Translations under genes and position numbers: made by a program
DNA from: Basidiobolus meristosporus CBS 931.73
Taxonomy: Eukaryota > Fungi > Basidiobolomycota
NCBI GenBank assembly: GCA_002104905.1
Contig: MCFE01000286.1
Span: 1 to 64,000 of the forward strand
Reading direction: 5' to 3'
Length of the DNA: 64,000 nt
The notes under the pieces: generated by a model
Told to the model about the DNA's origin: nothing
Seen by the model: only the letters and a program-made list of their open reading frames with translations
Database searches by the model: none
Shown: piece by piece, positions 1,768-15,719 of the stretch
Layout of the letters: each line of letters begins with the position of its first letter
Position numbering within the stretch: the stretch's first letter is position 1

Positions 1768-4700
1768 TTAGACGGCGGCTGCTACTACCTCACCACCATA
1801 CATATCCTCAAGATCAAGCTTTGGATCGCCAATCAACTTCAATCCAAACTTGTCGGAAAGAATCTTCACCGCACTAGGTCTCAAGAAAGCAGGAAGCTGC
1901 GGGCCGACTCGGACGTTTTGGATGCCCAGGGACAGCAACGACAGCAGAACAACCACCGCCTTCTGCTCGAACCAAGAAACAACGATGGACAGTGGGAGAT
2001 CGTGGATGGTGCAGTTCAACGACTCGGCGAGTGCGGTGGCGATCTGGATGGCCGAGTAGGCGTCATTACACTGGCCCATGTCGAGGAGTCTTGGGATACC
2101 CGAGTCTCCGATGGTCTTCCACTCTAACGAGTTGATACGGAATTTGCCACAGCCAGAGGTAAGCACCACAGCAGTCTCCGGAAGCATCTTGGCCAAATCG
2201 GTATAGTAGCTGCGCTCTCCTTCGTAACCGTCACAACCACCGATGACGAACACTCTGCTGATGTCGCCGGTTTCCATGGCTTTTAGAACAGCAGGGGCCA
2301 CATTCAAGACGGCCTCAGAGCTGAAACCAACCTGGTAGGTGTCAGTAGAGGGGGTGAAGGTGCTGGGAGGATATTCGAATTCTGGAGTGCCTTCACTGAA
2401 CCCGGGTGAGGCCAAAGCAACCTTGATCACCTCACTGAAGTCGAGATTGTCCCCTACATGGGGAATGTTTGGCCAGCCAACGACGCCAACGGTAAACAGT
2501 CTACCTTCGTAGTCATCCTTGGGTGGAGTCAGACAATTGGTAGTCATGACAATGGCACCAGGGAAGTGCGGGAACTCCACAGATTGTCTATGCCATGCCA
2601 GACCATAGTGACCTGCCAAGTGGTTATATTGGCGGAGCTTGGGGTATCCGTGGGCAGGCAGCATTTCTCCGTGAGTGTAGACGTTGATGCCCAAGCCTTC
2701 GGTCTGGCGAAGCAAAGAATCCAAGAACATGAAGTCGTGGCCGGAAACCAAGATGCATTTTCCGGGGCGTGGCTTGAGAGACACGGTGTGTGGTGATTGG
2801 GCGCCAAATGTCTTGTTGGCGTTGTGGAGGACATCCATGCAGATCAAGTTGATTTGGCCAAGCTCCATCAAGCAGGCCAAGGTCTTATCCATATCCTTGC
2901 AGTCCTTGGTGGTCAGGAAGTAGAATGCGCGATGCAAGAATTCATAGATACGACGATCCTCGTGAGCGAGCACCAGGGCGTGGTCGGCATATGCGCACAA
3001 GCCCTTCAGGCCGTACACGATCATCTCCTGCAATCCTACCAATGCATCGTTCTTGGTGGCTCTCATACGGCTGAGAATACCCACTTCCTTACCCTTGGAG
3101 ACAAGCATGTCCTCGATGTCACCAACCGAACCAGGAGCGCTGTCAAGGACTTCGGAGATGCTCTCCGGGATAGGGCACTTCTTGGGACGCAGGCCTAATC
3201 TCTTGCAGATCGCTTGATATTGGACACTCAAACGCTTGGTGTATTCTCTGCAATCGCGATGGAATTCAAGGAATCTATCGTTGTCAAAGTTGACATTGGT
3301 CAGGGTGGAGAAGGTAGCCTTCAATGAGTAATGGTTCACCTCAGGATACTCCACCTCAGATATCTGCACTTTGTCGCTGTGCTCGTACTGCAACTGGCGC
3401 AGATTGTAAGCGAACCAGGAGAGGCGCTTCAGGCAGGTGATCAAGAGATCTTGGAGAGCAGCCACCTCGGGAGTTTTGCCGCACACACCAATGGTGGTAC
3501 ATGCGCGGTTTTGATAGGTTTGTTCGCATTGGTAACAGAACATCTTGGCGTCTTCATACAGCGTTGCTGTGGGCACCTCAGCCCCTTGTGCTTGGCCTCC
3601 TTTCTTGAGAATAATGCTCTTGAGAGCATTTTCTTCGTCGGCACTCTTGGCGTAGGCCTCCACTTCCCAGCGGTTCTCCTTTCTAAGGTTGGCGATGATT
3701 TCCAGGGACTCTTCGTAGGAGATCTGCTTGTTGGCTTGCAGGCATTCACCAATGGTGATTTCCATGGCACCTGGGATTAATCCACCCAAACCGCAGTACA
3801 AGTACATGCCATTGTTTTCGAGGTAGTCGGTCACCTTCTCGGGGAAATCAAGCATTCTGACGGCGCAATTCTTCTTGTGATCACGGGAGGCGGCATCAAT
3901 CACCTCGACAAGTCCCTTACGCGTGAAGTTGTCCAACTCATCCTTGAAGAGATACTCATGCTCGTAGTATCTCATGCCATAGTAGAGCCTGATACGGGTC
4001 ATGTCGTGGCCCTGCTCAAGAAGGACCTCGCGATGCTGAAGAATGGAACGGAATACACCGATACCACTACCAAGGGCCACACCCAGGATCGGAGTGTCAA
4101 GACGCTCGGGCAGGTGCACCAATCCAGAATGGATCTTCAGGAACACGTATGGGTTCTCGGAATTGGGCTGTTTCTTGGAGAGGTAGGTGGAAGTCAGACC
4201 CTGGAATTTACCTCCGTTCTCGGTTGCCCATTCCTCCACGAAGAATACAATGTCAACCTTATCCTTAGAAACGAGGGGTGAGGAAGCAATAGAATAGTAT
4301 CTGCTGGAGATTCTGGGGACGTTGGTGATGAATTGCTCCAAAGAGATCTTGATCGAGGGATAGCGCTCGAGGACATCTACGACGCTGAATGTTGTGGAGG
4401 TGGAAAGCTTCATGTACATGTTTCCTTCCAGCATATCGGACGCCATGCTTTCGAGCGCCTCTTGCTCGTTGGCATCAGAAGCAAGGCAGCTGAATCCTTC
4501 AATAAGGGCACGGCTGGGGATCGCACTGATATCCAGGTAATTCTTCAGTATTTGGCGAACGGTCACCACGGTTGGCAATACGATAGCGTCATCCATGGTT
4601 TGAACCTCAATCGTCATATCCAAGTCGACATCCAACCGCTTGGCAGCGCGAGCCACCAATTCGTCCGGATTTTCGGGGACAACTTGCACATGGCCGGCCA

Positions 4701-5364
4701 CTTGATATTCTTGGTTTGTTTGGCTAATGTCGAATGTGACCAAGCAACCAGTTCTTTCGTACTCAGGAGAGGTAAGTCGCTTGTTCTGGACGACAGGGAC
4801 CTTGATGTATCCCTCATGGTGGATCTCCGGCACGGGTCGGTCAGAGGGTTGGATTTTGACTGAAACAGGCAAGCTCATCTTCACGTCGGAGCCGGTAAGC
4901 TTCATCCAGAAGGCCTTTAGCCAAGGACGGAAGGCTGTTTCATGGCCGTTTGGATCGTACTCGTCACCCAGTCCAACGGGCATGATGTTGAAGCCGCCAA
5001 GCTCAGTCATGCGTTGATCCAACAGCTTGGCAGCTTTGTTGAAGTTATCCTGCAAGGTTCTGTTTCCAAGTCCAAACACTGCGTATCTGGTTTGGCGGAA
5101 GAGTTGGGTCGAAGGATCCTGACGCTTGAGATAGGTCCAGAGAGGGGCGGCAGAATCAGGGAATTCACCATTGTAGAAAGTACTAGTCAAGAACACAATG
5201 AGAGGCTCGCTAGGCAAGCTCTCCAGGGCGACCTCATTCATGCGAGCCAGCTTGACGTCAAAGCTACGAATTTTGGCGAAGGTCTGCACGATCTTGGCAA
5301 AGCCTTCTGTAGTGCCGGTTTGGGAACCGTAGAGGATTAGCATGCGTGGCTTTTCAGAGAGCAT
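1768..5364 (-). CDS. hcp: Fusion of an NADPH-dependent diflavin (cytochrome P450 reductase-like) reductase and a hybrid cluster protein (Hcp/prismane), 1198 aa, intronless
   Basis: N-terminal part: flavodoxin motifs ILYGSQTGTTEGFAK, TSTFYNGEFPD and YAVFGLGN; FAD motif RYYSIASSP; NADPH-domain motifs LGSGIGVFRS, YYGMR, AASR and YLYCG. C-terminal part: Hcp cubane motif MFCYQCEQTYQNRACTTIGVCGK and hybrid-cluster motifs SGHD, THGEMLPAHGYP, TTNC, GGCDG, SGCGKFR, DMGQCNDAYSA and SWFEQKAV. Confidence 0.96.
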   Translation of the reverse strand: MLSEKPRMLILYGSQTGTTEGFAKIVQTFAKIRSFDVKLARMNEVALESLPSEPLIVFLTSTFYNGEFPDSAAPLWTYLKRQDPSTQLFRQTRYAVFGLGNRTLQDNFNKAAKLLDQRMTELGGFNIMPVGLGDEYDPNGHETAFRPWLKAFWMKLTGSDVKMSLPVSVKIQPSDRPVPEIHHEGYIKVPVVQNKRLTSPEYERTGCLVTFDISQTNQEYQVAGHVQVVPENPDELVARAAKRLDVDLDMTIEVQTMDDAIVLPTVVTVRQILKNYLDISAIPSRALIEGFSCLASDANEQEALESMASDMLEGNMYMKLSTSTTFSVVDVLERYPSIKISLEQFITNVPRISSRYYSIASSPLVSKDKVDIVFFVEEWATENGGKFQGLTSTYLSKKQPNSENPYVFLKIHSGLVHLPERLDTPILGVALGSGIGVFRSILQHREVLLEQGHDMTRIRLYYGMRYYEHEYLFKDELDNFTRKGLVEVIDAASRDHKKNCAVRMLDFPEKVTDYLENNGMYLYCGLGGLIPGAMEITIGECLQANKQISYEESLEIIANLRKENRWEVEAYAKSADEENALKSIILKKGGQAQGAEVPTATLYEDAKMFCYQCEQTYQNRACTTIGVCGKTPEVAALQDLLITCLKRLSWFAYNLRQLQYEHSDKVQISEVEYPEVNHYSLKATFSTLTNVNFDNDRFLEFHRDCREYTKRLSVQYQAICKRLGLRPKKCPIPESISEVLDSAPGSVGDIEDMLVSKGKEVGILSRMRATKNDALVGLQEMIVYGLKGLCAYADHALVLAHEDRRIYEFLHRAFYFLTTKDCKDMDKTLACLMELGQINLICMDVLHNANKTFGAQSPHTVSLKPRPGKCILVSGHDFMFLDSLLRQTEGLGINVYTHGEMLPAHGYPKLRQYNHLAGHYGLAWHRQSVEFPHFPGAIVMTTNCLTPPKDDYEGRLFTVGVVGWPNIPHVGDNLDFSEVIKVALASPGFSEGTPEFEYPPSTFTPSTDTYQVGFSSEAVLNVAPAVLKAMETGDISRVFVIGGCDGYEGERSYYTDLAKMLPETAVVLTSGCGKFRINSLEWKTIGDSGIPRLLDMGQCNDAYSAIQIATALAESLNCTIHDLPLSIVVSWFEQKAVVVLLSLLSLGIQNVRVGPQLPAFLRPSAVKILSDKFGLKLIGDPKLDLEDMYGGEVVAAAV

Positions 5365-6156
5365 TGTGGATTGTGTAGAAGTCAGAAACTATTGACGATG
5401 CCCTTGAAGCAGTTCGACCCCAGGTATTTATTCACTGTCACCAGTCATTGTAATTTACGAGAAGTTAACCCAATCAAACCTAGATTACACATACGACTAC
5501 CAATTCTGGCTGGTTTGTAATCTGCTCCCGATACGACAGGGATTTTTTATTATGCTGGCAGTCAATAAACTTGACCGAATATGTAAGCTATTTGATGACA
5601 ACTCTATATTTGCACCGCTTCCCAAGATCAACCCAGCTCAGATAGCGATCACGCTTAAATTCTTCCGATATCTCTCAACGCACTAGACCGTGCATGTGCA
5701 GTCCGCTTTGATATGCAGCGTGCATGGTTTCTAGGAGTCGAGTTACCATCGAAAGACCACATCGAGTAGATGGTGCTCGCGATTTAGGGGGCATATCTGG
5801 GCCATTGGCTTGAAAATCATCACAAAAAGGCAAAAGGCACTACAGTTCAAAATCTTCTATTTTTGTGCGAAATCCATGGCTCCGGTCGAAATTTCACTTG
5901 AATACTGGGTTCTGTCGGGCTAGGGGCCAAATCAGTTCCGAATCTGGCTTGCGCGCAGAAGTCGAGAGTGGAAATCCGAGGCAAAACTGGGCAACCTCCT
6001 CGATGGCGGCCACTTGATTCTCAGGGGGCTCCAACGCGACCAACTGGGCCATTCGCATTGGCAGGGATCGACACGGAAAATCTTTAGTGCTGTTTAACGT
6101 GAGGTTCGTGCATGGAGGATGGAATGCCCCGAAGAGTTTAAATCCAACCCAATATG

Positions 6157-6177
6157 GATTTGATGCATAATCAAATC
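6157..6177. promoter_or_regulatory. Perfect inverted repeat GATTTGAT-N5-ATCAAATC in the divergent hcp/HSF intergenic region
   Basis: The sequence reads gatttgat gcata atcaaatc. Any function is unproven. Confidence 0.3.
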
Positions 6178-6748
6178 AAATCAGATCGGATCGGATTAGC
6201 AGCAAAACCGATGTATATATGGGAATGCAGTGTGATCGAATCTTCCAAGTCGAATGGCACAATGGTAGGTCAGCACTCGAATGTGGATTTTATGGAATCT
6301 CAGAATTTCGGAATCAGCTAGTGCGATACCGCTGGCGATTGTATGCAAGCGCAATGGCCGAACACAAATGATCCTCAGCATCCATTGAATCAGAGTTTCA
6401 CCCAACCGAGCTAGATTAAATCCACCTGAAATCATTTTGCCTCAAGCGTAGACCGTGGTAAGCATGCCGCTTACTATCCCGCCTGTCGATCAACCCTCGC
6501 ATGAGAATCTCGAAAACCCATTTGGCAGTGATTCATGCGAGCGGGCATGCCGGCGGTTGTGAGACCCCATTGGGATCCCCTAAAGCAGAAAACCGGTTAT
6601 AGCGGTGGTTCTATACCTGTGCGCCCTTTGCCCTGGAATGCGTTTCCTGTCGAGATGAGGCAAATCGCGTATATAAGAGCGAGGGTGGGTGTCCTCTACT
6701 CGCCAACAGACAGAGCTACCTGGGCATCTCTATTTCTGGACTTCTCGA

Positions 6749-7934
6749 ATGATGAACGACATTCTTTCACCCATGTTAGGCAGCTTGGACAGTCAGCCTC
6801 TCCCCCAGTCCAAGGAAATCCCAATTTTTGTTCGTAAGCTGTATAGGTTAGTAGAGATGGGTGATGAGTGCTGCCACCATAGCTTTGCTCAACTCCTTGG
6901 CGGTATAATAGAATGCTTGAGAACGACAAACATGCTGAATACATCCGTTGGAACTTGTCTGGGAACAGCTTCGTTATCCCCGATGGTCCGTTACTTGCAG
7001 CCGTTGTGCTACCCCAATACTTCAAAGCCTCCACATTCTCTTCCTTTGTTCGCCAGCTTAACGTAAGTACTATGGACGGTGTATGAAGATCTTCGATCTG
7101 CCTAGACACCAGCTGCGTGTAACGTACAATACATCGTTCTCACGCATATCTAGAATTACCAGTTTCGCCGGATCTCTGATGCCCGAAAAGCCAAAAGCCC
7201 CACCAACCAACTGGCTTCCGTCTTTACCCATCCAAGCTTCCAGCGAGGAAAGTTCAATCTATTACATCGGATCAAGAGATCCGTCAATCGCGCCACAAGA
7301 CACAAGGCCAAGATCCATTGTGATGAGACAGTAAAACGTGAGGAGACCGCTCTTCCGCAGTTGATTAGCGGGGTGGACTGCAGCTCCAGCGAGGGAGAAG
7401 AGTTGGGTGACTTGGGTGCGTAAATACCAGATCCGTATCCTAAGCTCCACTTGCTAATGCTGCTTCTTTCTTGTAGCAGACAGCCACACTTGCACAAGCT
7501 GCCAAAGCCTGTGCATGGAGGTACAGGTGCTGAGACAGAGACTACGCAGTTATGAGGACATATTTGCTGGCAATAGCGAGCAGAATTACTCTACCCAGCA
7601 TGCAGAGCGTGAGGCCAGTCCCAGACAAGCACTCCTGGCTCATCAACCAGTCAACGCCGCCCTCAAATCCGAGGACTGGCCGTTGGAGACACCTAACCAA
7701 GAGTATGAGATCTTTTCCAAGCTATCGTGGATGTACAGCCTGGAGGACCCAACGCTGGCTTCTGCCGAGGCCACGTCAGACTCGCTGGGTGACGGAGTGC
7801 TTTCCCTTGAGCAGCCATGGTGTGATGATCTGAACAGTGCAATGGGCCAATTTGCAGTGAACTGGAACATGGCTGATCGAAAGTGCACGGAGGAGGTTCC
7901 AATCAACGCTGTTTACCCATTTTATGATGTATGA
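6749..7934 (+). CDS. HSF-type DNA-binding domain transcription factor (about 4 exons)
   Basis: Spliced: IPIFVRKLYR|MLENDKHAEYIRWNLSGNSFVIPDGPLLAAVVLPQYFKASTFSSFVRQLN|NYQFRRISDARK...FTHPSFQRGKFNLLHRIKR. This matches the HSF winged-helix consensus (F..KLY.M, IxW...G.SF, LPxYFK.S.FSSFVRQLN). A short coiled coil (LCMEVQVLRQRL) follows. Confidence 0.9.
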
Positions 7935-10476: not shown

Positions 10477-11721
10477 ATGTCTAAAGGAAAGGTTTTACTG
10501 GCTTACTCTGGTGGTCTCGACACCTCCTGCATCCTCGTCTGGCTCATTGAGCAGGGCTACGAGGTTCTCGCTTACCTTGCCAACGTTGGTCAAGAAGAGG
10601 ACTTTGATGCTGCTCGCGAGAAGGCACTCAAGATCGGTGCCTCGAAGGTGTTCATCGAAGATTTGAGACGTGAGTTCGTCGAAGAGCTCATCTACCCCGC
10701 TGTCCAGGCCAACACCATCTACGAGGGTGTCTACTTGCTTGGCACATCTCTTGCCCGCCCCGTCATTGCTCGCCGCCAGATTGAGCTTGCCAAGCAGGAA
10801 GGCTGCACACATGTGTCCCATGGATGCACCGGAAAGGGTAATGACCAAGTCCGCTTTGAGCTCGCTTACTATGCACTTCAGCCTGATATCAAGGTTGTCG
10901 CCCCTTGGAGAATCCCCGAGTTCTTCACCAGATTCCCAGGACGTGCCAGCCTGCTGGAGTACGCAGCTGAGAAGGGAATCCCTGTAGTCCAGACTGCTGC
11001 CAAGCCTTGGTCCACTGATGAGAACCTGTTCCACATCTCCTACGAGGCTGGTATTCTCGAGGATCCAAGCGTCACCCCACCCAGAGATATGTGGAAGCTC
11101 ACCGTCGACCCTGAGGATGCCCCCAATACCCCCGAGAGAATCTCCATCAAGTTCGAGAAGGGCAAACCAGTCGAGGTGAAGAACCACAACGACAACACCG
11201 TTGTCACCGATGCTCTTGAGCTCTTCACCTACCTCAACACCCTTGGCCGTCGCAATGGCATCGGTCGTATTGATATCGTCGAGAACCGTTTCATTGGTAT
11301 CAAGAGCCGTGGTTGCTACGAGACCCCTGGTGGCACCATCCTCCGTGCTGCTCATGTTGACCTTGAAGGGCTAACCCTGGATCGCCAAGTCAGAGCTTTC
11401 CGTGACGAAAGTGTGACCCCGGCACTGTCCAACCTTTTGTACAACGGTATGTACTTCTCCCCCGAGAGCACCTACCTCCTCTCCACCGTCGCCGCCTCTC
11501 AAGTGTCAGTGAATGGTGTTGTCAACCTTAAGCTTTACAAGGGCAATGTCGTTGTTGAAGGACGCTACAGTGAGACCGAGAAGCTGTATGATATGGAGGA
11601 GAGCTCCATGGATGTCCAAGGAGGCTTCAGCCCAGAAGACTCTGAAGGCTTCATCAAGATCCAGAGCATTCGTCTCAAGAAGTTTGGTCAATCAGTTGCC
11701 CGTAATGGTGGCAAATTCTAA
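10477..11721 (+). CDS. ARG1: Argininosuccinate synthase, copy 1 (414 aa, intronless)
   Basis: Contains the ATP-binding motif LAYSGGLDTS, plus YLLGTSLARP, HGCTGKGNDQVRFE, STDENLFHISYE and ENRFIGIKSRGCYETP. Confidence 0.98.
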   Translation: MSKGKVLLAYSGGLDTSCILVWLIEQGYEVLAYLANVGQEEDFDAAREKALKIGASKVFIEDLRREFVEELIYPAVQANTIYEGVYLLGTSLARPVIARRQIELAKQEGCTHVSHGCTGKGNDQVRFELAYYALQPDIKVVAPWRIPEFFTRFPGRASLLEYAAEKGIPVVQTAAKPWSTDENLFHISYEAGILEDPSVTPPRDMWKLTVDPEDAPNTPERISIKFEKGKPVEVKNHNDNTVVTDALELFTYLNTLGRRNGIGRIDIVENRFIGIKSRGCYETPGGTILRAAHVDLEGLTLDRQVRAFRDESVTPALSNLLYNGMYFSPESTYLLSTVAASQVSVNGVVNLKLYKGNVVVEGRYSETEKLYDMEESSMDVQGGFSPEDSEGFIKIQSIRLKKFGQSVARNGGKF

Positions 11722-12472
11722 TCAGAGGCCTATGCATGTATAGACTATTCATGTATTTTATGGGGATTCATTCAATTCAATGCAAATAATAAACATCCTG
11801 AAGCATAGTCAACATTGCATAACACTTGGTTCTTTGAAGATACTGCCTTGGTGAGACTCGAAAGTATAAAGCACAATCTCTTACAATGTATGAGAAATAG
11901 ATTGAGATTGGAGTTGTTACATTTAGCATTCGAGAGTAAGTAGCAACATTCATTACGTATGCCTGATCAATCATCACCATAAATCTATCTAGCAAATCAC
12001 TGGCTTCGTATCAATCGTGACTCCATTTGTATACAATATGGAGATGCAACTATCTTGGCTCTTCGGTGGCTTTTACGGCCAATCAACGGCAGGACTGCCT
12101 CAAATTTTCCCATGCGGTAGGCACAAATTTGCTGATTCCTATTTGGGTACAGGGAAATATCTTATTTTGGAGATGGTTGGTTTCTACCGTTAACATGTGC
12201 AAAAAGAAACTGTCCAGGAATTCCTTTTCTGGACCATCGTACAACCTACAACCACATGTTAACATACTTTTCGATACGTATGGCGAAAAGCACCCGGAGC
12301 AACTGCACTGTATTGAATCAAGTGGAATATATATTTATTGTTTTCATTAAGATGATAGCATCTTGATAACTGGACACATGACTGGAGGAGATTTCGAAGT
12401 CGTGAAATATAAAAACCATGGATTCCGAAGGACGTCAACATATCAACACTGACTTCACTGTTAAATAGTAAA

Positions 12473-13717
12473 ATGGCTCAAGGAAAGGTTTTATTGGCTT
12501 ACTCTGGTGGTCTCGACACCTCCTGCATCCTCGTCTGGCTCATTGAGCAGGGCTACGAGGTTCTCGCTTACCTTGCCAACGTTGGTCAAGAAGAGGACTT
12601 TGATGCTGCTCGCGAGAAGGCACTCAAGATCGGTGCCTCGAAGGTGTTCATCGAAGATTTGAGACGTGAGTTCGTCGAAGAGCTCATCTACCCCGCTGTC
12701 CAGGCCAACACCATCTACGAGGGTGTCTACTTGCTTGGCACCTCTCTTGCCCGCCCCGTCATTGCTCGCCGCCAGATTGAGCTTGCCAAGCAAGAAGGCT
12801 GCACACATGTGTCCCATGGATGCACCGGAAAGGGTAATGACCAAGTCCGCTTTGAGCTCGCTTACTATGCACTTCAGCCTGATATCAAGGTTGTCGCCCC
12901 TTGGAGAATCCCCGAGTTCTTCACCAGATTCCCAGGACGTGCCAGCCTGCTGGAGTATGCAGCTGAGAAGGGAATCCCTGTAGTCCAGACTGCTGCCAAG
13001 CCTTGGTCCACTGATGAGAACCTGTTCCACATCTCCTACGAGGCTGGTATTCTCGAGGATCCAAGCGTCACGCCACCCAGAGATATGTGGAAGCTCACTG
13101 TCGACCCTGAGGATGCCCCCAATACCCCCGAGAGAATCTCCATCAAGTTCGAGAAGGGCAAACCAGTCGAGGTGAAGAACCACAACGACAACACCGTTGT
13201 CACCGATGCTCTTGAGCTCTTCACCTACCTCAACACCCTTGGCCGTCGCAATGGCATTGGTCGTATTGATATCGTCGAGAACCGTTTCATTGGTATCAAG
13301 AGCCGTGGTTGCTACGAGACCCCTGGTGGCACCATCCTCCGTGCTGCTCATGTTGACCTTGAAGGGCTGACCCTGGATCGCCAAGTCAGAGCTTTCCGTG
13401 ACGAAAGTGTGACCCCGGCACTGTCCAACCTTTTGTACAACGGTATGTACTTCTCCCCCGAGAGCACCTACCTCCTCTCCACCGTCGCCGCCTCTCAAGT
13501 GTCAGTGAATGGTGTTGTCAACCTTAAGCTTTACAAGGGCAATGTCGTTGTTGAAGGACGCTACAGTGAGACCGAGAAGCTGTATGATATGGAGGAGAGC
13601 TCCATGGATGTCCAAGGAGGCTTCAGCCCGGAAGACTCTGAAGGCTTCATCAAGATCCAGAGCATTCGTCTCAAGAAGTTTGGTCAATCAGTTGCCCGCA
13701 ATGGTGGTAAATTTTAA
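12473..13717 (+). CDS. ARG1: Argininosuccinate synthase, copy 2 (414 aa; N-terminus MAQG instead of MSKG)
   Basis: Same motifs as copy 1. The protein is identical to copy 1 except at residues 2-3. Confidence 0.98.
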   Translation: MAQGKVLLAYSGGLDTSCILVWLIEQGYEVLAYLANVGQEEDFDAAREKALKIGASKVFIEDLRREFVEELIYPAVQANTIYEGVYLLGTSLARPVIARRQIELAKQEGCTHVSHGCTGKGNDQVRFELAYYALQPDIKVVAPWRIPEFFTRFPGRASLLEYAAEKGIPVVQTAAKPWSTDENLFHISYEAGILEDPSVTPPRDMWKLTVDPEDAPNTPERISIKFEKGKPVEVKNHNDNTVVTDALELFTYLNTLGRRNGIGRIDIVENRFIGIKSRGCYETPGGTILRAAHVDLEGLTLDRQVRAFRDESVTPALSNLLYNGMYFSPESTYLLSTVAASQVSVNGVVNLKLYKGNVVVEGRYSETEKLYDMEESSMDVQGGFSPEDSEGFIKIQSIRLKKFGQSVARNGGKF

Positions 13718-14184
13718 GGGAAAACCACTGAGGCAACGAAATACTTCCAATACGGTATATAGAACGCACCACATCAATACACCCTTCCATCCGTAACACT
13801 GTTAGATAAAATGTTAATATCTCAAATTTATTGTCCCAACAATAAAGTAATTTGACACATAGTCTCGAAAGTCGGCTCCGACAGGAATTCGTCAGTAAGC
13901 TGGCTCTAATCACGGCTCTGCTAGCGCAGTGTAGTAACAATAGCAAGCGAATCTTTGCGACTCGGGCTCAACTTGACCTCATTTCCGTCACTTACGTAAC
14001 AACGCTTCAAAAGATTCCTCTTGGGGAGGTGGTTCATACAAAATAAATCAATGAAATTGAAATCAAACTATGTATTTTAGTGCTTTTCCCCATCGTAACA
14101 CACTGGTTACCGGAGATGATTACGAATTGACCACTAACTAGCCAATAAAGGGTTCCGTGCTGTTATAATATGGGCCCAATGTTT

Positions 14185-14193
14185 ATGACTCAT
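14185..14193. promoter_or_regulatory. Perfect Gcn4/CpcA (AP-1-type) response element ATGACTCAT upstream of ARG1 copy 3
   Basis: ATGACTCAT lies ~280 bp upstream of the ATG. ARG1/argininosuccinate synthase is an established target of general amino-acid control in ascomycetes. Confidence 0.55.
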
Positions 14194-14474
14194 ATCGTTG
14201 TAACTGTGACTTGAAGATTCAGAGACAGGTTGACAAATTGGCTCTTGAAAAATGATTTATTTTCGGTATCGCTATATATCATACCATTTATAGCTGTGCA
14301 CAGTCGCACTAATGGAGAGATCCGGTCATCAGATCTAGACAAAAAGCAGATATACTATAGCACATGCGCTATTCCAATCATCAACCTGTAACGATGAGAA
14401 TATAAATCGGAAGTATACCTGCTCAAAGTTTCAGCTGCTGTTAGCATCTAACATCTTCTAGTCCCTCACTTATC

Positions 14475-15719
14475 ATGTCTAAAGGAAAGGTTTTACTGGC
14501 TTACTCTGGTGGTCTCGACACCTCCTGCATCCTCGTCTGGCTCATTGAGCAGGGCTACGAGGTTCTCGCTTACCTTGCCAACGTTGGTCAAGAAGAGGAC
14601 TTTGATGCTGCTCGCGAGAAGGCACTCAAGATCGGTGCCTCGAAGGTGTTCATCGAAGATTTGAGACGTGAGTTCGTCGAAGAGCTCATCTACCCCGCTG
14701 TCCAGGCCAACACCATCTACGAGGGTGTCTACTTGCTTGGTACCTCTCTTGCCCGCCCCGTCATTGCTCGCCGCCAGATTGAACTTGCCAAGCAAGAAGG
14801 CTGCACACATGTGTCCCATGGATGCACCGGAAAGGGTAATGACCAAGTCCGCTTTGAGCTCGCTTACTATGCACTTCAGCCTGATATCAAGGTTGTCGCC
14901 CCTTGGAGAATCCCCGAGTTCTTCACCAGATTCCCAGGACGTGCCAGCCTGCTGGAGTATGCAGCTGAGAAGGGAATCCCTGTAGTCCAGACTGCTGCCA
15001 AGCCTTGGTCCACTGATGAGAACCTGTTCCACATCTCCTACGAGGCTGGTATTCTCGAGGATCCAAGCGTCACCCCACCCAGAGATATGTGGAAGCTCAC
15101 CGTCGACCCTGAGGATGCCCCCAATACCCCCGAGAGAATCTCCATCAAGTTCGAGAAGGGCAAGCCAGTCGAGGTGAAGAACCACAACGACAACACCGTT
15201 GTCACCGATGCTCTTGAGCTCTTCACCTACCTCAACACCCTTGGCCGTCGCAATGGCATCGGTCGTATTGATATCGTCGAGAACCGCTTCATTGGTATCA
15301 AGAGCCGTGGTTGCTACGAGACCCCTGGTGGCACCATCCTCCGTGCTGCTCATGTTGACCTTGAAGGGCTGACCCTGGATCGCCAAGTCAGAGCTTTCCG
15401 TGACGAAAGTGTGACCCCGGCACTGTCCAACCTTTTGTACAACGGTATGTACTTCTCCCCCGAGAGCACCTACCTCCTCTCCACCGTCGCCGCCTCTCAA
15501 GTGTCAGTGAATGGTGTTGTCAACCTTAAGCTTTACAAGGGCAATGTCGTTGTTGAAGGACGCTACAGTGAGACTGAGAAGCTGTATGATATGGAGGAGA
15601 GCTCCATGGATGTCCAAGGAGGCTTCAGCCCGGAAGACTCTGAAGGCTTCATCAAGATCCAGAGCATTCGTCTCAAGAAGTTTGGTCAATCAGTTGCCCG
15701 CAATGGTGGCAAATTTTAA
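14475..15719 (+). CDS. ARG1: Argininosuccinate synthase, copy 3 (414 aa; protein identical to copy 1)
   Basis: Same motifs as copy 1. It differs from copy 1 only at synonymous sites. Confidence 0.98.
   Translation: MSKGKVLLAYSGGLDTSCILVWLIEQGYEVLAYLANVGQEEDFDAAREKALKIGASKVFIEDLRREFVEELIYPAVQANTIYEGVYLLGTSLARPVIARRQIELAKQEGCTHVSHGCTGKGNDQVRFELAYYALQPDIKVVAPWRIPEFFTRFPGRASLLEYAAEKGIPVVQTAAKPWSTDENLFHISYEAGILEDPSVTPPRDMWKLTVDPEDAPNTPERISIKFEKGKPVEVKNHNDNTVVTDALELFTYLNTLGRRNGIGRIDIVENRFIGIKSRGCYETPGGTILRAAHVDLEGLTLDRQVRAFRDESVTPALSNLLYNGMYFSPESTYLLSTVAASQVSVNGVVNLKLYKGNVVVEGRYSETEKLYDMEESSMDVQGGFSPEDSEGFIKIQSIRLKKFGQSVARNGGKF

What the first reader, a model, noticed from the sequence alone, without database searches (positions are those of the whole stretch)
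1768..5364. Self-sufficient reductase-Hcp fusion: a candidate eukaryotic single-chain NO/hydroxylamine reductase
Seen: one uninterrupted ORF joins a full FMN/FAD/NADPH diflavin reductase (~3650-5364) through a short linker to a complete Hcp (1768-3543). All cubane and hybrid-cluster ligand motifs are intact. The reductase's usual C-terminal FAD-shielding Trp motif appears as RWEVEAY and runs directly on into the linker. Established: bacterial Hcp reduces NO/hydroxylamine and depends on a separate electron donor (Hcr in E. coli), while diflavin fusions make P450BM3 and NO synthase self-sufficient. Inference: this is an NOS-like architecture working in reverse, passing electrons NADPH to FAD to FMN to [4Fe-4S] to the hybrid cluster, to remove NO under hypoxia. 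I have an unverified recollection that similar fusions occur in some early-diverging fungi and oomycetes, so novelty must be checked.
Basis: partly seen in the sequence, partly recalled or inferred. Interest (0 to 1): 0.85.

Follow-up and report, generated by a model that had tools for sequence, protein, structure and literature searches.

The report
Fungal NADPH reductase–Hcp fusion gene
A gut-dwelling fungus (Basidiobolus meristosporus) carries an intact gene that joins an NADPH-type two-flavin reductase to an iron-sulfur "hybrid cluster" enzyme, probably a self-powered nitric oxide or hydroxylamine reductase; the fusion is real but belongs to a widespread, already catalogued and biochemically unstudied family of eukaryotic genes.

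Summary
Window 1768-5364 (-) is one 1198-aa ORF with no intron. It holds Flavodoxin_1, FAD_binding_1 and NAD_binding_1, then a 36-residue linker, then a complete Hcp with every cubane and hybrid-cluster ligand.

The window is Basidiobolus meristosporus CBS 931.73, scaffold MCFE01000286.1, and this exact protein is already in NCBI and UniRef. The genome holds three old paralogs, all under strong purifying selection in every part (dN 0.05-0.12, dS saturated). This scan has already reported the other two paralogs on other DNA.

At least 60 full-length proteins share the architecture: chytrids, monoblepharids, ichthyosporeans, oomycetes, Cyanophora, Chromera, ochrophytes, euglenid-like and dinoflagellate-like plankton. 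Separate trees of the two halves each give one clade with matching topology, so there was one ancient fusion.

Best reading: NAD(P)H to FAD to FMN to [4Fe-4S] to hybrid cluster, reducing NO or hydroxylamine. This is inferred, not assayed.

- The domain order is opposite to NOS and P450BM3.
- The FAD shield is Tyr571, not the Trp.

The only paper I found that mentions the fusion does so in one table footnote, and I found no biochemistry. I rate it a new variant of a known kind, of moderate interest.

The parts
1768..5364 (-). Whole coding sequence of the reductase-Hcp fusion: 1198 aa plus stop, single exon.
   Evidence: ORF list and translation. Identical to the NCBI gene model on MCFE01000286.1.
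4921..5337 (-). FMN (flavodoxin-like) domain, residues 10-148. The protein has no N-terminal anchor or targeting extension.
   Evidence: Pfam PF00258, E 5e-29. The SQTGT loop at 14-18 is conserved in at least 50 of 54 homologs. The N-terminus starts 13 residues before the SQTGT loop.
4183..4821 (-). FAD-binding domain, residues 182-394, including R355-Y-Y357-S358.
   Evidence: Pfam PF00667, E 6e-49. R355 and Y357 are invariant and S358 is in 53 of 54. It aligns with rat CPR.
3772..4080 (-). NAD(P)H-binding domain, residues 429-531: G432-x-G434, S493-R494, C524-G525.
   Evidence: Pfam PF00175, 26 bits against a cut-off of 22. S493 and R494 align with rat S596 and R597. Conservation.
3652..3672 (-). 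C-terminal reductase motif R565-W-E-V-E-A-Y571. Tyr571 is the predicted FAD-shielding aromatic residue.
   Evidence: Alignment to rat CPR 'RYSLDVW'. Position 571 is F or Y in 54 of 54.
3544..3651 (-). Linker, residues 572-607, carrying the family-conserved D576-x-E578-N579-x-L581 motif.
   Evidence: D576 in 53 of 54, E or D at 578 in 54 of 54, N579 in 52 of 54. Residues 574-596 have pLDDT below 50. dN/dS of about 0.08 against paralog P0002.
1771..3543 (-). Hybrid cluster protein (Hcp) module, residues 608-1198. It begins with the invariant Met608 of the ancestral MFCxQC N-terminus.
   Evidence: Pfam Prismane, E 1e-136. NCBIfam equivalog for hydroxylamine reductase. PDB 7de4, E 2e-133. Model TM 0.93 to solved Hcps.
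3481..3537 (-). [4Fe-4S] cubane motif C610-x2-C613-x8-C622-x5-C628, with class I spacing and no 4-residue class II insertion.
   Evidence: All four Cys are in 54 of 54 homologs. Class definition from PMC10210160.
1966..2739 (-). Span holding the hybrid-cluster ligands H876, E900, C944, C1044, C1072, C1099 and E1133.
   Evidence: Alignment to E. coli Hcp and M. thermolithotrophicus Hcp. Each ligand is conserved in 51 to 54 of 54.
5423..5522 (-). Putative core promoter: the TATA-like ATAAATACC at -67 and a GATTACAAAC block at -158. All three paralogs share both at like offsets.
   Evidence: The blocks are conserved although synonymous sites between the paralogs are saturated. Their function is inferred.

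Best explanation
The gene encodes a soluble, probably cytosolic, single-chain oxidoreductase. An N-terminal CPR/CysJ-type diflavin reductase takes a hydride from NAD(P)H onto FAD. NADPH is favoured in this copy by Ser493 and Arg494. Single electrons then pass to FMN. The FMN (flavodoxin-like) domain delivers them to the N-terminal [4Fe-4S] cluster of a class-I-type hybrid cluster protein, and from there they reach the [4Fe-2S-2O] hybrid cluster.

By analogy with bacterial Hcp, the hybrid cluster reduces NO (to N2O) and/or hydroxylamine (to ammonium). The fused reductase replaces the separate donor, which is Hcr in E. coli and unknown for class I Hcps. The likely role is nitrosative-stress or N-oxide clearance under low oxygen, for example in the animal gut where Basidiobolus lives.

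Shown here: the architecture, intact cofactor sites, purifying selection, a single origin of the fusion and co-evolution of the two halves. Inferred: the electron path, the substrate and the physiological setting.
For: - One ORF with four Pfam domains.
- The Hcp half scores above the NCBIfam equivalog cut-offs. It matches solved Hcps at E 2e-133 and TM 0.93.
- The reductase half matches CPR, NOS and BM3 reductases at E about 1e-58 over its full length.
- All 11 metal ligands are conserved in 51 to 54 of 54 fused homologs, as are the FMN, FAD and NAD(P)H motifs.
- The three paralogs show dN 0.05-0.12 with saturated dS, which puts omega below about 0.08 wherever dS can be estimated (the FMN domain, linker and Hcp module each in at least one pair), and dN is equally low in the FAD/NADPH module.
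- The Hcp halves of all fusions form one clade (SH-aLRT 99). The reductase halves form one clade (100). Both trees show the same two subclades.
- Homologs from transcriptome assemblies (MMETSP, Trinity) encode the complete fused ORF.
- A natural variant, P0066, has only the FMN domain joined to Hcp. That points to FMN as the direct partner of Hcp.
- The literature states that the donor of class I Hcp is unknown and that NAD(P)H-driven reduction is exergonic (PMC10210160).
- In Desulfovibrio desulfuricans, NO induces both hcp and a separate cluster that includes a flavodoxin-family gene (PMC5701242).
Against: - There is no biochemical, spectroscopic or expression evidence for any member of the family. 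No RNA run was listed for this organism.
- The AlphaFold linker (574-596) has low confidence, and I could not measure the distance from FMN to the cubane because no coordinates were available.
- The position of rat CPR Tyr178, which stacks on FMN, is Leu104 here and Asn in most homologs, so FMN binding or its potentials may be atypical.
- Arg494 is His in 36 of 54 homologs, so NADPH preference is not a secure family trait.
- Hcp is oxygen-labile and Basidiobolus grows aerobically.
- The substrate of Hcp is still debated even in bacteria.
Confidence: 0.7

Rival explanations
1. The chemistry and electron path are the same, but the physiological job is nitrogen scavenging. The enzyme would reduce hydroxylamine (or a related N-oxide) to ammonium for assimilation, rather than remove NO.
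For: Databases name the family 'hydroxylamine reductase'. Papers on algae and diatoms place HCP in peripheral nitrogen metabolism (PMC10328945; PMC13198582). Two of the three loci lie beside argininosuccinate synthase genes.
Against: Recent bacterial work points to high-affinity NO reduction as the physiological role (PMC10210160). Adjacency of genes in a eukaryote is weak evidence, and here it was inherited through a block duplication.
Confidence: 0.2
2. The Hcp module acts mainly as a peroxidase, a protein S-nitrosylase or a redox sensor, and the reductase keeps it reduced. The product would then be a stress signal rather than bulk substrate turnover.
For: Alternative Hcp activities are discussed in the literature (PMC10210160 cites trans-nitrosylation). 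An HSF-type transcription factor gene is divergently transcribed next to two of the three paralogs.
Against: The active-site ligands are identical to those of catalytic Hcps. Nothing specific in the sequence points to a signalling partner.
Confidence: 0.07
3. The locus yields two separate proteins. This could happen by internal initiation at the invariant Met608, by an internal promoter, or by cleavage in the flexible linker. Hcp and the reductase would then act as a two-component system like Hcp and Hcr.
For: Met608, a relic of the Hcp start codon, is invariant in 54 of 54. The linker has low pLDDT.
Against: The frame is kept open across the junction in every homolog I examined, 71 proteins carrying both halves, including complete transcripts. 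The linker is under purifying selection and carries a conserved DxENxL motif. Both halves co-evolve as a unit.
Confidence: 0.05
4. The fusion is an artefact: an assembly chimera, bacterial contamination or a decaying pseudogene.
For: None found. The gene has no intron, which can look bacterial.
Against: Contigs from runs of two different years span the junction. The gene sits on a 103-kb scaffold among fungal genes with introns. There are three paralogs plus B. ranarum orthologs. Omega is below 0.08. The nearest prokaryotic Hcps are only 46-48% identical and are not fused.
Confidence: 0.01

Closest known systems
E. coli Hcp with its NADH-dependent reductase Hcr (class II Hcp system)
   Same: A pyridine-nucleotide-driven flavoprotein feeds the N-terminal Fe-S cluster of an Hcp, which carries the same hybrid-cluster ligands. 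E. coli Hcp (7de4) is the best solved match: E 2e-133, 41% identity, TM 0.93.
   Different: Hcr is a separate polypeptide with FAD and [2Fe-2S]. Here the donor is a fused FMN/FAD diflavin reductase of a different family. The cubane motif has class I spacing without the class II insertion that was proposed as the Hcr docking site.
Class I Hcps of Desulfovibrio and Methanothermococcus (1e1d, 1gn9, 8cnr)
   Same: The Cx2Cx8Cx5C cubane motif, the full three-domain fold and the same ligands.
   Different: These are stand-alone proteins whose electron donor is unknown (PMC10210160). The fused family also carries a 12-residue insertion (995-1006) that is absent from the nearest prokaryotic Hcps.
Self-sufficient diflavin fusions: P450BM3, NO synthase, pyruvate:NADP+ oxidoreductase (PFO-CPR) and [FeFe]-hydrogenase-CPR
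   Same: The same FMN/FAD/NADPH module makes a redox enzyme independent of a separate donor. After its own family, the reductase half's nearest relatives (about 30-34% identity) are such modules fused to PFO, hydrogenase, a GlpA-like enzyme and P450.
   Different: In all of those the reductase is C-terminal to the catalytic domain. Here it is N-terminal, so the normally free C-terminal FAD-shielding aromatic residue is internal and runs on into a conserved linker.
Assimilatory sulfite reductase CysJ/CysI
   Same: A diflavin flavoprotein whose FMN domain reduces an Fe-S-containing catalytic partner. CysJ is the best NCBIfam hit of the reductase half, and its C-terminus ends in Tyr, like Tyr571 here (the CysJ C-terminal Tyr is from my own knowledge).
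   Different: The score is far below the CysJ equivalog cut-off (188 against 668 bits), so this is not an ortholog. The partner is Hcp rather than a siroheme hemoprotein, and it is fused.
The 'HCP fused to sulfite reductase' gene of Cyanophora paradoxa, noted in PMC8003979
   Same: The footnote appears to describe the same family. A probable Cyanophora protein, P0005 (so assigned only from its EukProt gene-model name), is 49% identical over 99% of the length and falls in the same subclade.
   Different: It is mentioned only in a table footnote, with no analysis or biochemistry. The window's gene is a fungal paralog without an N-terminal extension.
Fungal NO-detoxifying enzymes P450nor (CYP55) and flavohaemoglobin
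   Same: Pyridine-nucleotide-dependent removal of NO in fungi (from my own knowledge).
   Different: These are unrelated haem proteins. Flavohaemoglobin needs O2, whereas Hcp chemistry is anaerobic.

Membership tests
Hybrid cluster protein (Pfam PF03063 Prismane; NCBIfam TIGR01703/NF003658 hydroxylamine reductase) | Full-length match above the curated family cut-off. | tested here: met
   Prismane 457 bits against a cut-off of 27. NF003658 643 bits against 367, and TIGR01703 610 against 361.
Hybrid cluster protein | Four N-terminal Cys that bind the cubane cluster. | tested here: met
   C610, C613, C622 and C628 align with the Cys of E. coli and M. thermolithotrophicus Hcp. Each is in 54 of 54 homologs.
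Hybrid cluster protein | The seven hybrid-cluster ligands: His, two Glu and four Cys, one of them the persulfide Cys. | tested here: met
   H876, E900, C944, C1044, C1072, C1099 and E1133 lie in the conserved SGHD, THGEM, TNC, GGCDG, GCGK, GQCND and FEQKA motifs.
Hybrid cluster protein | The three-domain Hcp fold. | tested here: met
   The AlphaFold model against 7de4, 1e1d and 1gn9 gives a target TM of 0.93 and rmsd 2.8-3.1 Å.
Hybrid cluster protein | The protein actually holds a [4Fe-4S] and a [4Fe-2S-2O] cluster and has NO or NH2OH reductase activity. | not testable with these tools
   Needs anaerobic purification, EPR and enzyme assays.
Class I Hcp (as against classes II and III) | A cubane motif without the 4-residue class II insertion, and a full-length N-terminal domain (not the shortened class III form). 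| tested here: met
   The spacing is Cx2Cx8Cx5C. Against E. coli class II Hcp the alignment shows gaps of 3 and 1 residues in the query at the motif. The query aligns from the N-terminus of class I and II chains but only from residue 177 onward with class III chains 7e0l and 7wsx. Class definitions from PMC10210160.
Hcp-Hcr two-component system | A separate Hcr-type (FAD plus [2Fe-2S]) reductase gene next to hcp. | tested here: not met
   No such gene is called in the 10 kb upstream or in the ~1.8 kb downstream that remain before the end of the scaffold. The neighbours are a GNAT, an HSF-domain gene and argininosuccinate synthase genes.
Diflavin reductase family (CPR, CysJ, NOS reductase, MSR) | An FMN domain with the (S/T)QTG(T/S) phosphate loop, followed by an FAD domain with RxYS and an NAD(P)H domain with GxG and a catalytic Cys. 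| tested here: met
   S14-Q-T-G-T18, R355-Y-Y-S358, G432-S-G434 and C524-G525. Pfam PF00258, PF00667 and PF00175 occur in that order.
Diflavin reductase family | A C-terminal aromatic residue that stacks on FAD (Trp677 in rat CPR). | tested here: met
   Tyr571 aligns with that position and is F or Y in 54 of 54. It is internal here, not near a free C-terminus.
Microsomal NADPH-cytochrome P450 reductase proper | An N-terminal membrane anchor, and the FMN-stacking Tyr140 and Tyr178. | tested here: not met
   The flavodoxin fold starts at residue 8, so there is no anchor. Phe63 matches Tyr140, but the Tyr178 position is Leu104.
CysJ (sulfite reductase flavoprotein) orthologs | A score above the NCBIfam equivalog cut-off. 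| tested here: not met
   TIGR01931 scores 188 bits against a cut-off of 668.
NOS/P450BM3-type self-sufficient fusions | The catalytic domain lies N-terminal to the reductase module. | tested here: not met
   The order here is reductase then Hcp. The nearest fused relatives (PFO-CPR, hydrogenase-CPR, P450-CPR) all have the reductase last.
Eukaryotic reductase-Hcp fusion family (unnamed) | Both halves fall inside the single clades formed by the fused proteins, and the linker carries the DxENxL motif. | tested here: met
   The Hcp tree clade has support 99 and the reductase tree clade has support 100. The linker holds D576, E578, N579 and L581.

The most novel reading that the evidence does not exclude
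The fusion works as a Rosetta stone for the unknown electron donor of class I Hcps, pointing to a flavodoxin-type FMN protein. On this reading the family is a widespread NAD(P)H-driven NO reductase of eukaryotes that produces N2O. It occurs in fungi, oomycetes and ichthyosporeans, and in tandem gene arrays in dinoflagellate-like plankton. If so, it would be an unrecognised eukaryotic route of NO detoxification and N2O emission in hypoxic soils, guts and oceans.
Probability: 0.25. Interest if true: 0.75.

Novelty: new variant of a known kind. Interest (0 to 1): 0.5.

Why it matters
Hcp has been studied for more than 30 years. Its physiological role is still debated, and the electron donor of class I enzymes is unknown (PMC10210160).

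A natural, strongly conserved fusion to an NADPH diflavin reductase names a donor type: an FMN or flavodoxin domain. A natural FMN-only variant supports the same reading. The fusion also offers a self-contained protein that could be assayed with NADPH alone, without hunting for a partner.

The family is spread across many eukaryotic lineages, including ecologically abundant algae and animal-pathogenic oomycetes. If it reduces NO to N2O, it would add a route to eukaryotic nitrosative-stress defence and to N2O budgets. For this particular window, though, the gene is already deposited and the scan has already reported its two paralogs.

Tried and rejected
RNA evidence for a single transcript. The RNA search listed no run and the 'any' search listed only DNA runs. 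The one read-laying run could therefore confirm only that the DNA is continuous.

Literature. Ten full-text searches found no paper that analyses or assays the fusion, only the Cyanophora footnote in PMC8003979. Andersson et al. 2006 (PMC1484493) does not mention it. The key eukaryotic HCP paper (van Lis et al. 2020, FEBS J) is not held and may discuss it.

Ideas I considered and rejected:
- Bacterial contamination or recent bacterial transfer. All named full-length fusions are eukaryotic, and the nearest prokaryotic Hcps are unfused and only 46-48% identical.
- Membership of CysJ or of microsomal CPR (no anchor).
- A 'functional gene island' reading of the ASS-HSF-RedHcp neighbourhood. The order recurs in paralogous locus L001 but not in L002, and a block duplication explains it.

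The careful full-length tree did not finish, so I used the quick PMSF tree.


Full report
**1. Observation**

The ORF list shows one ORF at 1768..5364 on the minus strand. It is 1198 aa, starts with ATG and has no internal stop. Pfam places four domains in this order:
- Flavodoxin_1, residues 10-148
- FAD_binding_1, residues 182-394
- NAD_binding_1, residues 429-531
- Prismane/Hcp, residues 608-1185 (E 1e-136)

The reductase ends at Tyr571 (nt 3652) and the Hcp module starts at Met608 (nt 3543).

The Hcp half exceeds NCBIfam's equivalog cut-offs for hydroxylamine reductase (643 against 367 bits). It matches solved Hcps at E 2e-133 (E. coli, 7de4) down to about 2e-114 (the Desulfovibrio Hcps).

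Alignment and motif positions identify the ligands:
- Cubane: C610, C613, C622 and C628.
- Hybrid cluster: H876, E900, C944, C1044, C1072, C1099 and E1133.

The Cys spacing is Cx2Cx8Cx5C. This is the class I pattern, without the 4-residue class II insertion (definition in PMC10210160).

The reductase half matches rat and human CPR, the NOS reductase and the BM3 reductase over its whole length at E about 1e-58 to 1e-54. It keeps these sites:
- the SQTGT loop that binds the FMN phosphate;
- R355-Y-Y-S358 for FAD;
- G432-x-G434, S493-R494 (rat S596 and R597) and C524 for NAD(P)H.

In the motif RWEVEAY, the residue that aligns with rat Trp677 is the terminal Tyr571, not the Trp.

**2. Source and reality of the gene**

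The exact protein is already in NCBI, UniRef and EukProt. It maps to Basidiobolus meristosporus CBS 931.73, assembly GCA_002104905.1, scaffold MCFE01000286.1, and the coding sequence is identical to the window's.

Contigs from runs of two different years (2013 and 2016) cross the domain junction without a break. Neighbouring genes are ordinary fungal genes, some with introns.

The same assembly holds two further paralogs:
- P0001 on MCFE01000019.1, 91% identical.
- P0002 on MCFE01000483.1, 84% identical.

B. ranarum has orthologs. This scan already reported the other two paralogs on other pieces of this genome (s1-197423 and s1-212418), and my results agree with those reports.

**3. Selection**

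Between the three paralogs dN is 0.05-0.12. dS is saturated: above 1.8 or not computable. Omega is therefore below about 0.08 wherever dS could be estimated: the FMN domain, the linker and the Hcp module each gave a value in at least one pair. For the FAD/NADPH module dS was not computable in any pair, but its dN is just as low. These are old duplicates, and all have been kept intact.

**4. The family**

A search with the whole protein finds about 65 full-length proteins with the same architecture at 37-91% identity and about 99% coverage. They come from:
- Basidiobolus;
- chytrids (Polychytrium, Podochytrium, Siphonaria);
- monoblepharids (Gonapodya, Hyaloraphidium);
- ichthyosporeans (Sphaeroforma, Creolimax);
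- saprolegnian oomycetes (Aphanomyces, Saprolegnia, Achlya, Thraustotheca);
- Chromera, Chrysophaeum and a probable Cyanophora protein;
- MMETSP and Trinity transcripts, and many environmental contigs.

A cluster containing Euglena mutabilis fragments also belongs. Domain mapping found both halves in 71 of 236 retrieved proteins, with a linker of about 22-43 residues.

Across 54 non-redundant fusions:
- every cubane Cys is invariant;
- each hybrid-cluster ligand is present in 51 to 54;
- R355, Y357 and G434 are invariant;
- position 571 is always F or Y;
- Met608, the relic of the Hcp start codon, is invariant.

The linker carries a family signature, D576-x-E578-N579-x-L581, conserved in 52 to 54 of 54. 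AlphaFold nevertheless gives residues 574-596 a pLDDT below 50.

**5. Origin**

In a tree of 134 Hcp sequences, all fused proteins form one clade with SH-aLRT support 99. A few short, probably truncated entries fall inside it. The clade is separate from the green-algal and metamonad Hcps and from the nearest prokaryotic Hcps. Those prokaryotic sequences, from Planctomycetota and Verrucomicrobiota, are 46-48% identical.

In a tree of 112 diflavin modules, the reductase halves form one clade with support 100. It shows the same two subclades and nearly the same internal topology:
- Subclade A: opisthokonts, oomycetes and Cyanophora.
- Subclade B: algae.

I conclude that there was one fusion event and that the two halves have co-evolved since.

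An exhaustive HMMER search shows a sharp drop outside the family, from 478-287 bits to 294 and then 258 bits or less. The next relatives are about 30-34% identical. They are diflavin modules fused C-terminally to PFO, [FeFe]-hydrogenase, a GlpA-like dehydrogenase or P450, plus some stand-alone forms.

The domain order here, with the reductase first, is therefore the reverse of NOS, BM3 and PNO.

The gene tree conflicts with the species tree. Oomycetes nest beside chytrids plus ichthyosporeans with support 100, and fungi are not monophyletic. An AU test rejects opisthokont monophyly at p about 0.001. I named that group after seeing the tree, which weakens the test. Transfer between eukaryotes, or old paralogy with differential loss, would explain the conflict.

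**6. Structure**

The AlphaFold2 model, built on a 48-sequence alignment, has mean pLDDT 84 and pTM 0.71. It shows two well-folded halves joined by a low-confidence linker.

- The Hcp half superposes on solved Hcps at target TM 0.93 and rmsd about 2.9 Å.
- The reductase half superposes on closed CPR structures only at target TM about 0.64 and rmsd about 10-11 Å.

The second figure suggests that the FMN domain is not in the closed CPR position in the model. I could not inspect coordinates, so this stays a hint.

**7. Mechanism**

The best-supported reading is NAD(P)H to FAD to FMN to [4Fe-4S] to hybrid cluster within one polypeptide or a dimer, reducing NO and/or hydroxylamine. Three pieces of evidence beyond the architecture support it:

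- A natural variant, P0066 (756 aa), joins the FMN domain alone to the distal linker and Hcp. It is a clean deletion of the FAD/NADPH module and sits in four identical tandem copies on an environmental contig. This is what one expects if the FMN domain is the direct partner of Hcp.
- PMC10210160 states that the donor of class I Hcps is unknown and that reduction by NAD(P)H would be exergonic.
- In D. desulfuricans, NO induces hcp and also a separate gene cluster that includes a flavodoxin-family protein (PMC5701242).

Caveats:
- The position of rat Tyr178, which stacks on FMN, is Leu104 here and Asn in most homologs.
- Arg494 is His in 36 of 54 homologs, so cofactor preference and FMN potentials need measuring.
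- The window's protein has no N-terminal extension, so it is probably cytosolic. Many subclade B proteins carry extensions of 75-100 residues, which probably target them to organelles.

**8. What is known**

The protein is deposited under the names 'hybrid cluster protein' or 'hydroxylamine reductase'. Ten full-text searches found one mention of the fusion. [quoted passage not shown]

I found no biochemical, structural or expression study of any member. One key paper, van Lis et al. 2020, is not held.

**Verdict**

I rate it a new variant of a known kind: Hcp with a dedicated pyridine-nucleotide reductase, here of a different family, fused and in reversed order. The family is widespread and catalogued but uncharacterised.

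Interest is moderate. The fusion makes the question of the Hcp donor, and of what Hcp does in eukaryotes, directly testable. This locus itself adds little beyond the two paralogs already reported by the scan.

Noticed in passing
window 5423-5431 and 5513-5522 (- strand); L001 about 9848 and 9936; L002 about 9833 and 9923: All three paralogs share a GATTACAAAC block at -158, -153 and -168 from the ATG. They also share a TATA-like ATAAATACC at -67, -65 and -78. Synonymous sites between the paralogs are saturated, so these are likely a shared promoter element of unknown factor.
   Followed up: partly
window 6154-6182 and 6297-6706; L001 9114-9142 and 8589-8999: In the divergent region between the HSF-domain gene and the fusion gene, a 29-nt block is 96.6% identical between the two paralogous loci. 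A 417-nt block is 68% identical. It looks like an unannotated 5' exon of the HSF-domain gene, which is modelled as only 110 aa here against 340 aa in L001.
   Followed up: partly
window 6818-7303 (+), 10477-15719 (+); L001 3220-8521: The order argininosuccinate synthase, HSF-domain gene, reductase-Hcp is kept in the window (three ASS copies) and in paralogous locus L001 (one ASS copy within the 10 kb of upstream flank fetched). Paralog L002 differs: an indoleamine 2,3-dioxygenase gene lies upstream. A block duplication is the simplest explanation.
   Followed up: partly
L004 49-10817: An environmental long contig carries four identical tandem copies (period about 2833 nt) of a 756-aa flavodoxin-Hcp gene. 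It lacks the whole FAD/NADPH module and nests inside the algal subclade of the fusion family. The array looks dinoflagellate-like.
   Followed up: partly
L007 616-12807: Three identical tandem copies, plus a partial fourth, of a 1240-aa full-length reductase-Hcp gene with spacers of about 510 nt. This is another dinoflagellate-like tandem array and suggests high gene dosage in some plankton.
   Followed up: no
proteins P0012, P0014, P0017, P0029, P0031, P0033 (oomycetes): Oomycete copies nest beside chytrid and ichthyosporean copies with support 100. An AU test rejects opisthokont monophyly at p about 0.001. This suggests transfer of the fused gene between eukaryotes, or old paralogy. Saprolegnians carry two paralogs.
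   Followed up: partly
window 2347-2382 (residues 995-1006): A 12-residue insertion (EFEYPPSTFTPS here, with conserved F996 and Y998) is present in 98% of the fused family and about half of the unfused eukaryotic Hcps. It is absent from the nearest prokaryotic Hcps.
   Followed up: partly
window 4913-4951: In all three DNA runs Logan's contigs break at the same place. A 39-nt unitig there has about 1.7 times the depth, probably k-mers shared with a paralog. It is not a break in the gene.
   Followed up: no
proteins P0237, P0238, P0247: Three unusual diflavin-related architectures appeared among the reductase hits. One is a 1839-aa protein with six tandem flavodoxin domains. One is a GlpA-like dehydrogenase with BFD, DUF1667 and a CPR module. 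One is a CPR fused to RasGEF, ankyrin repeats and hemerythrin.
   Followed up: no
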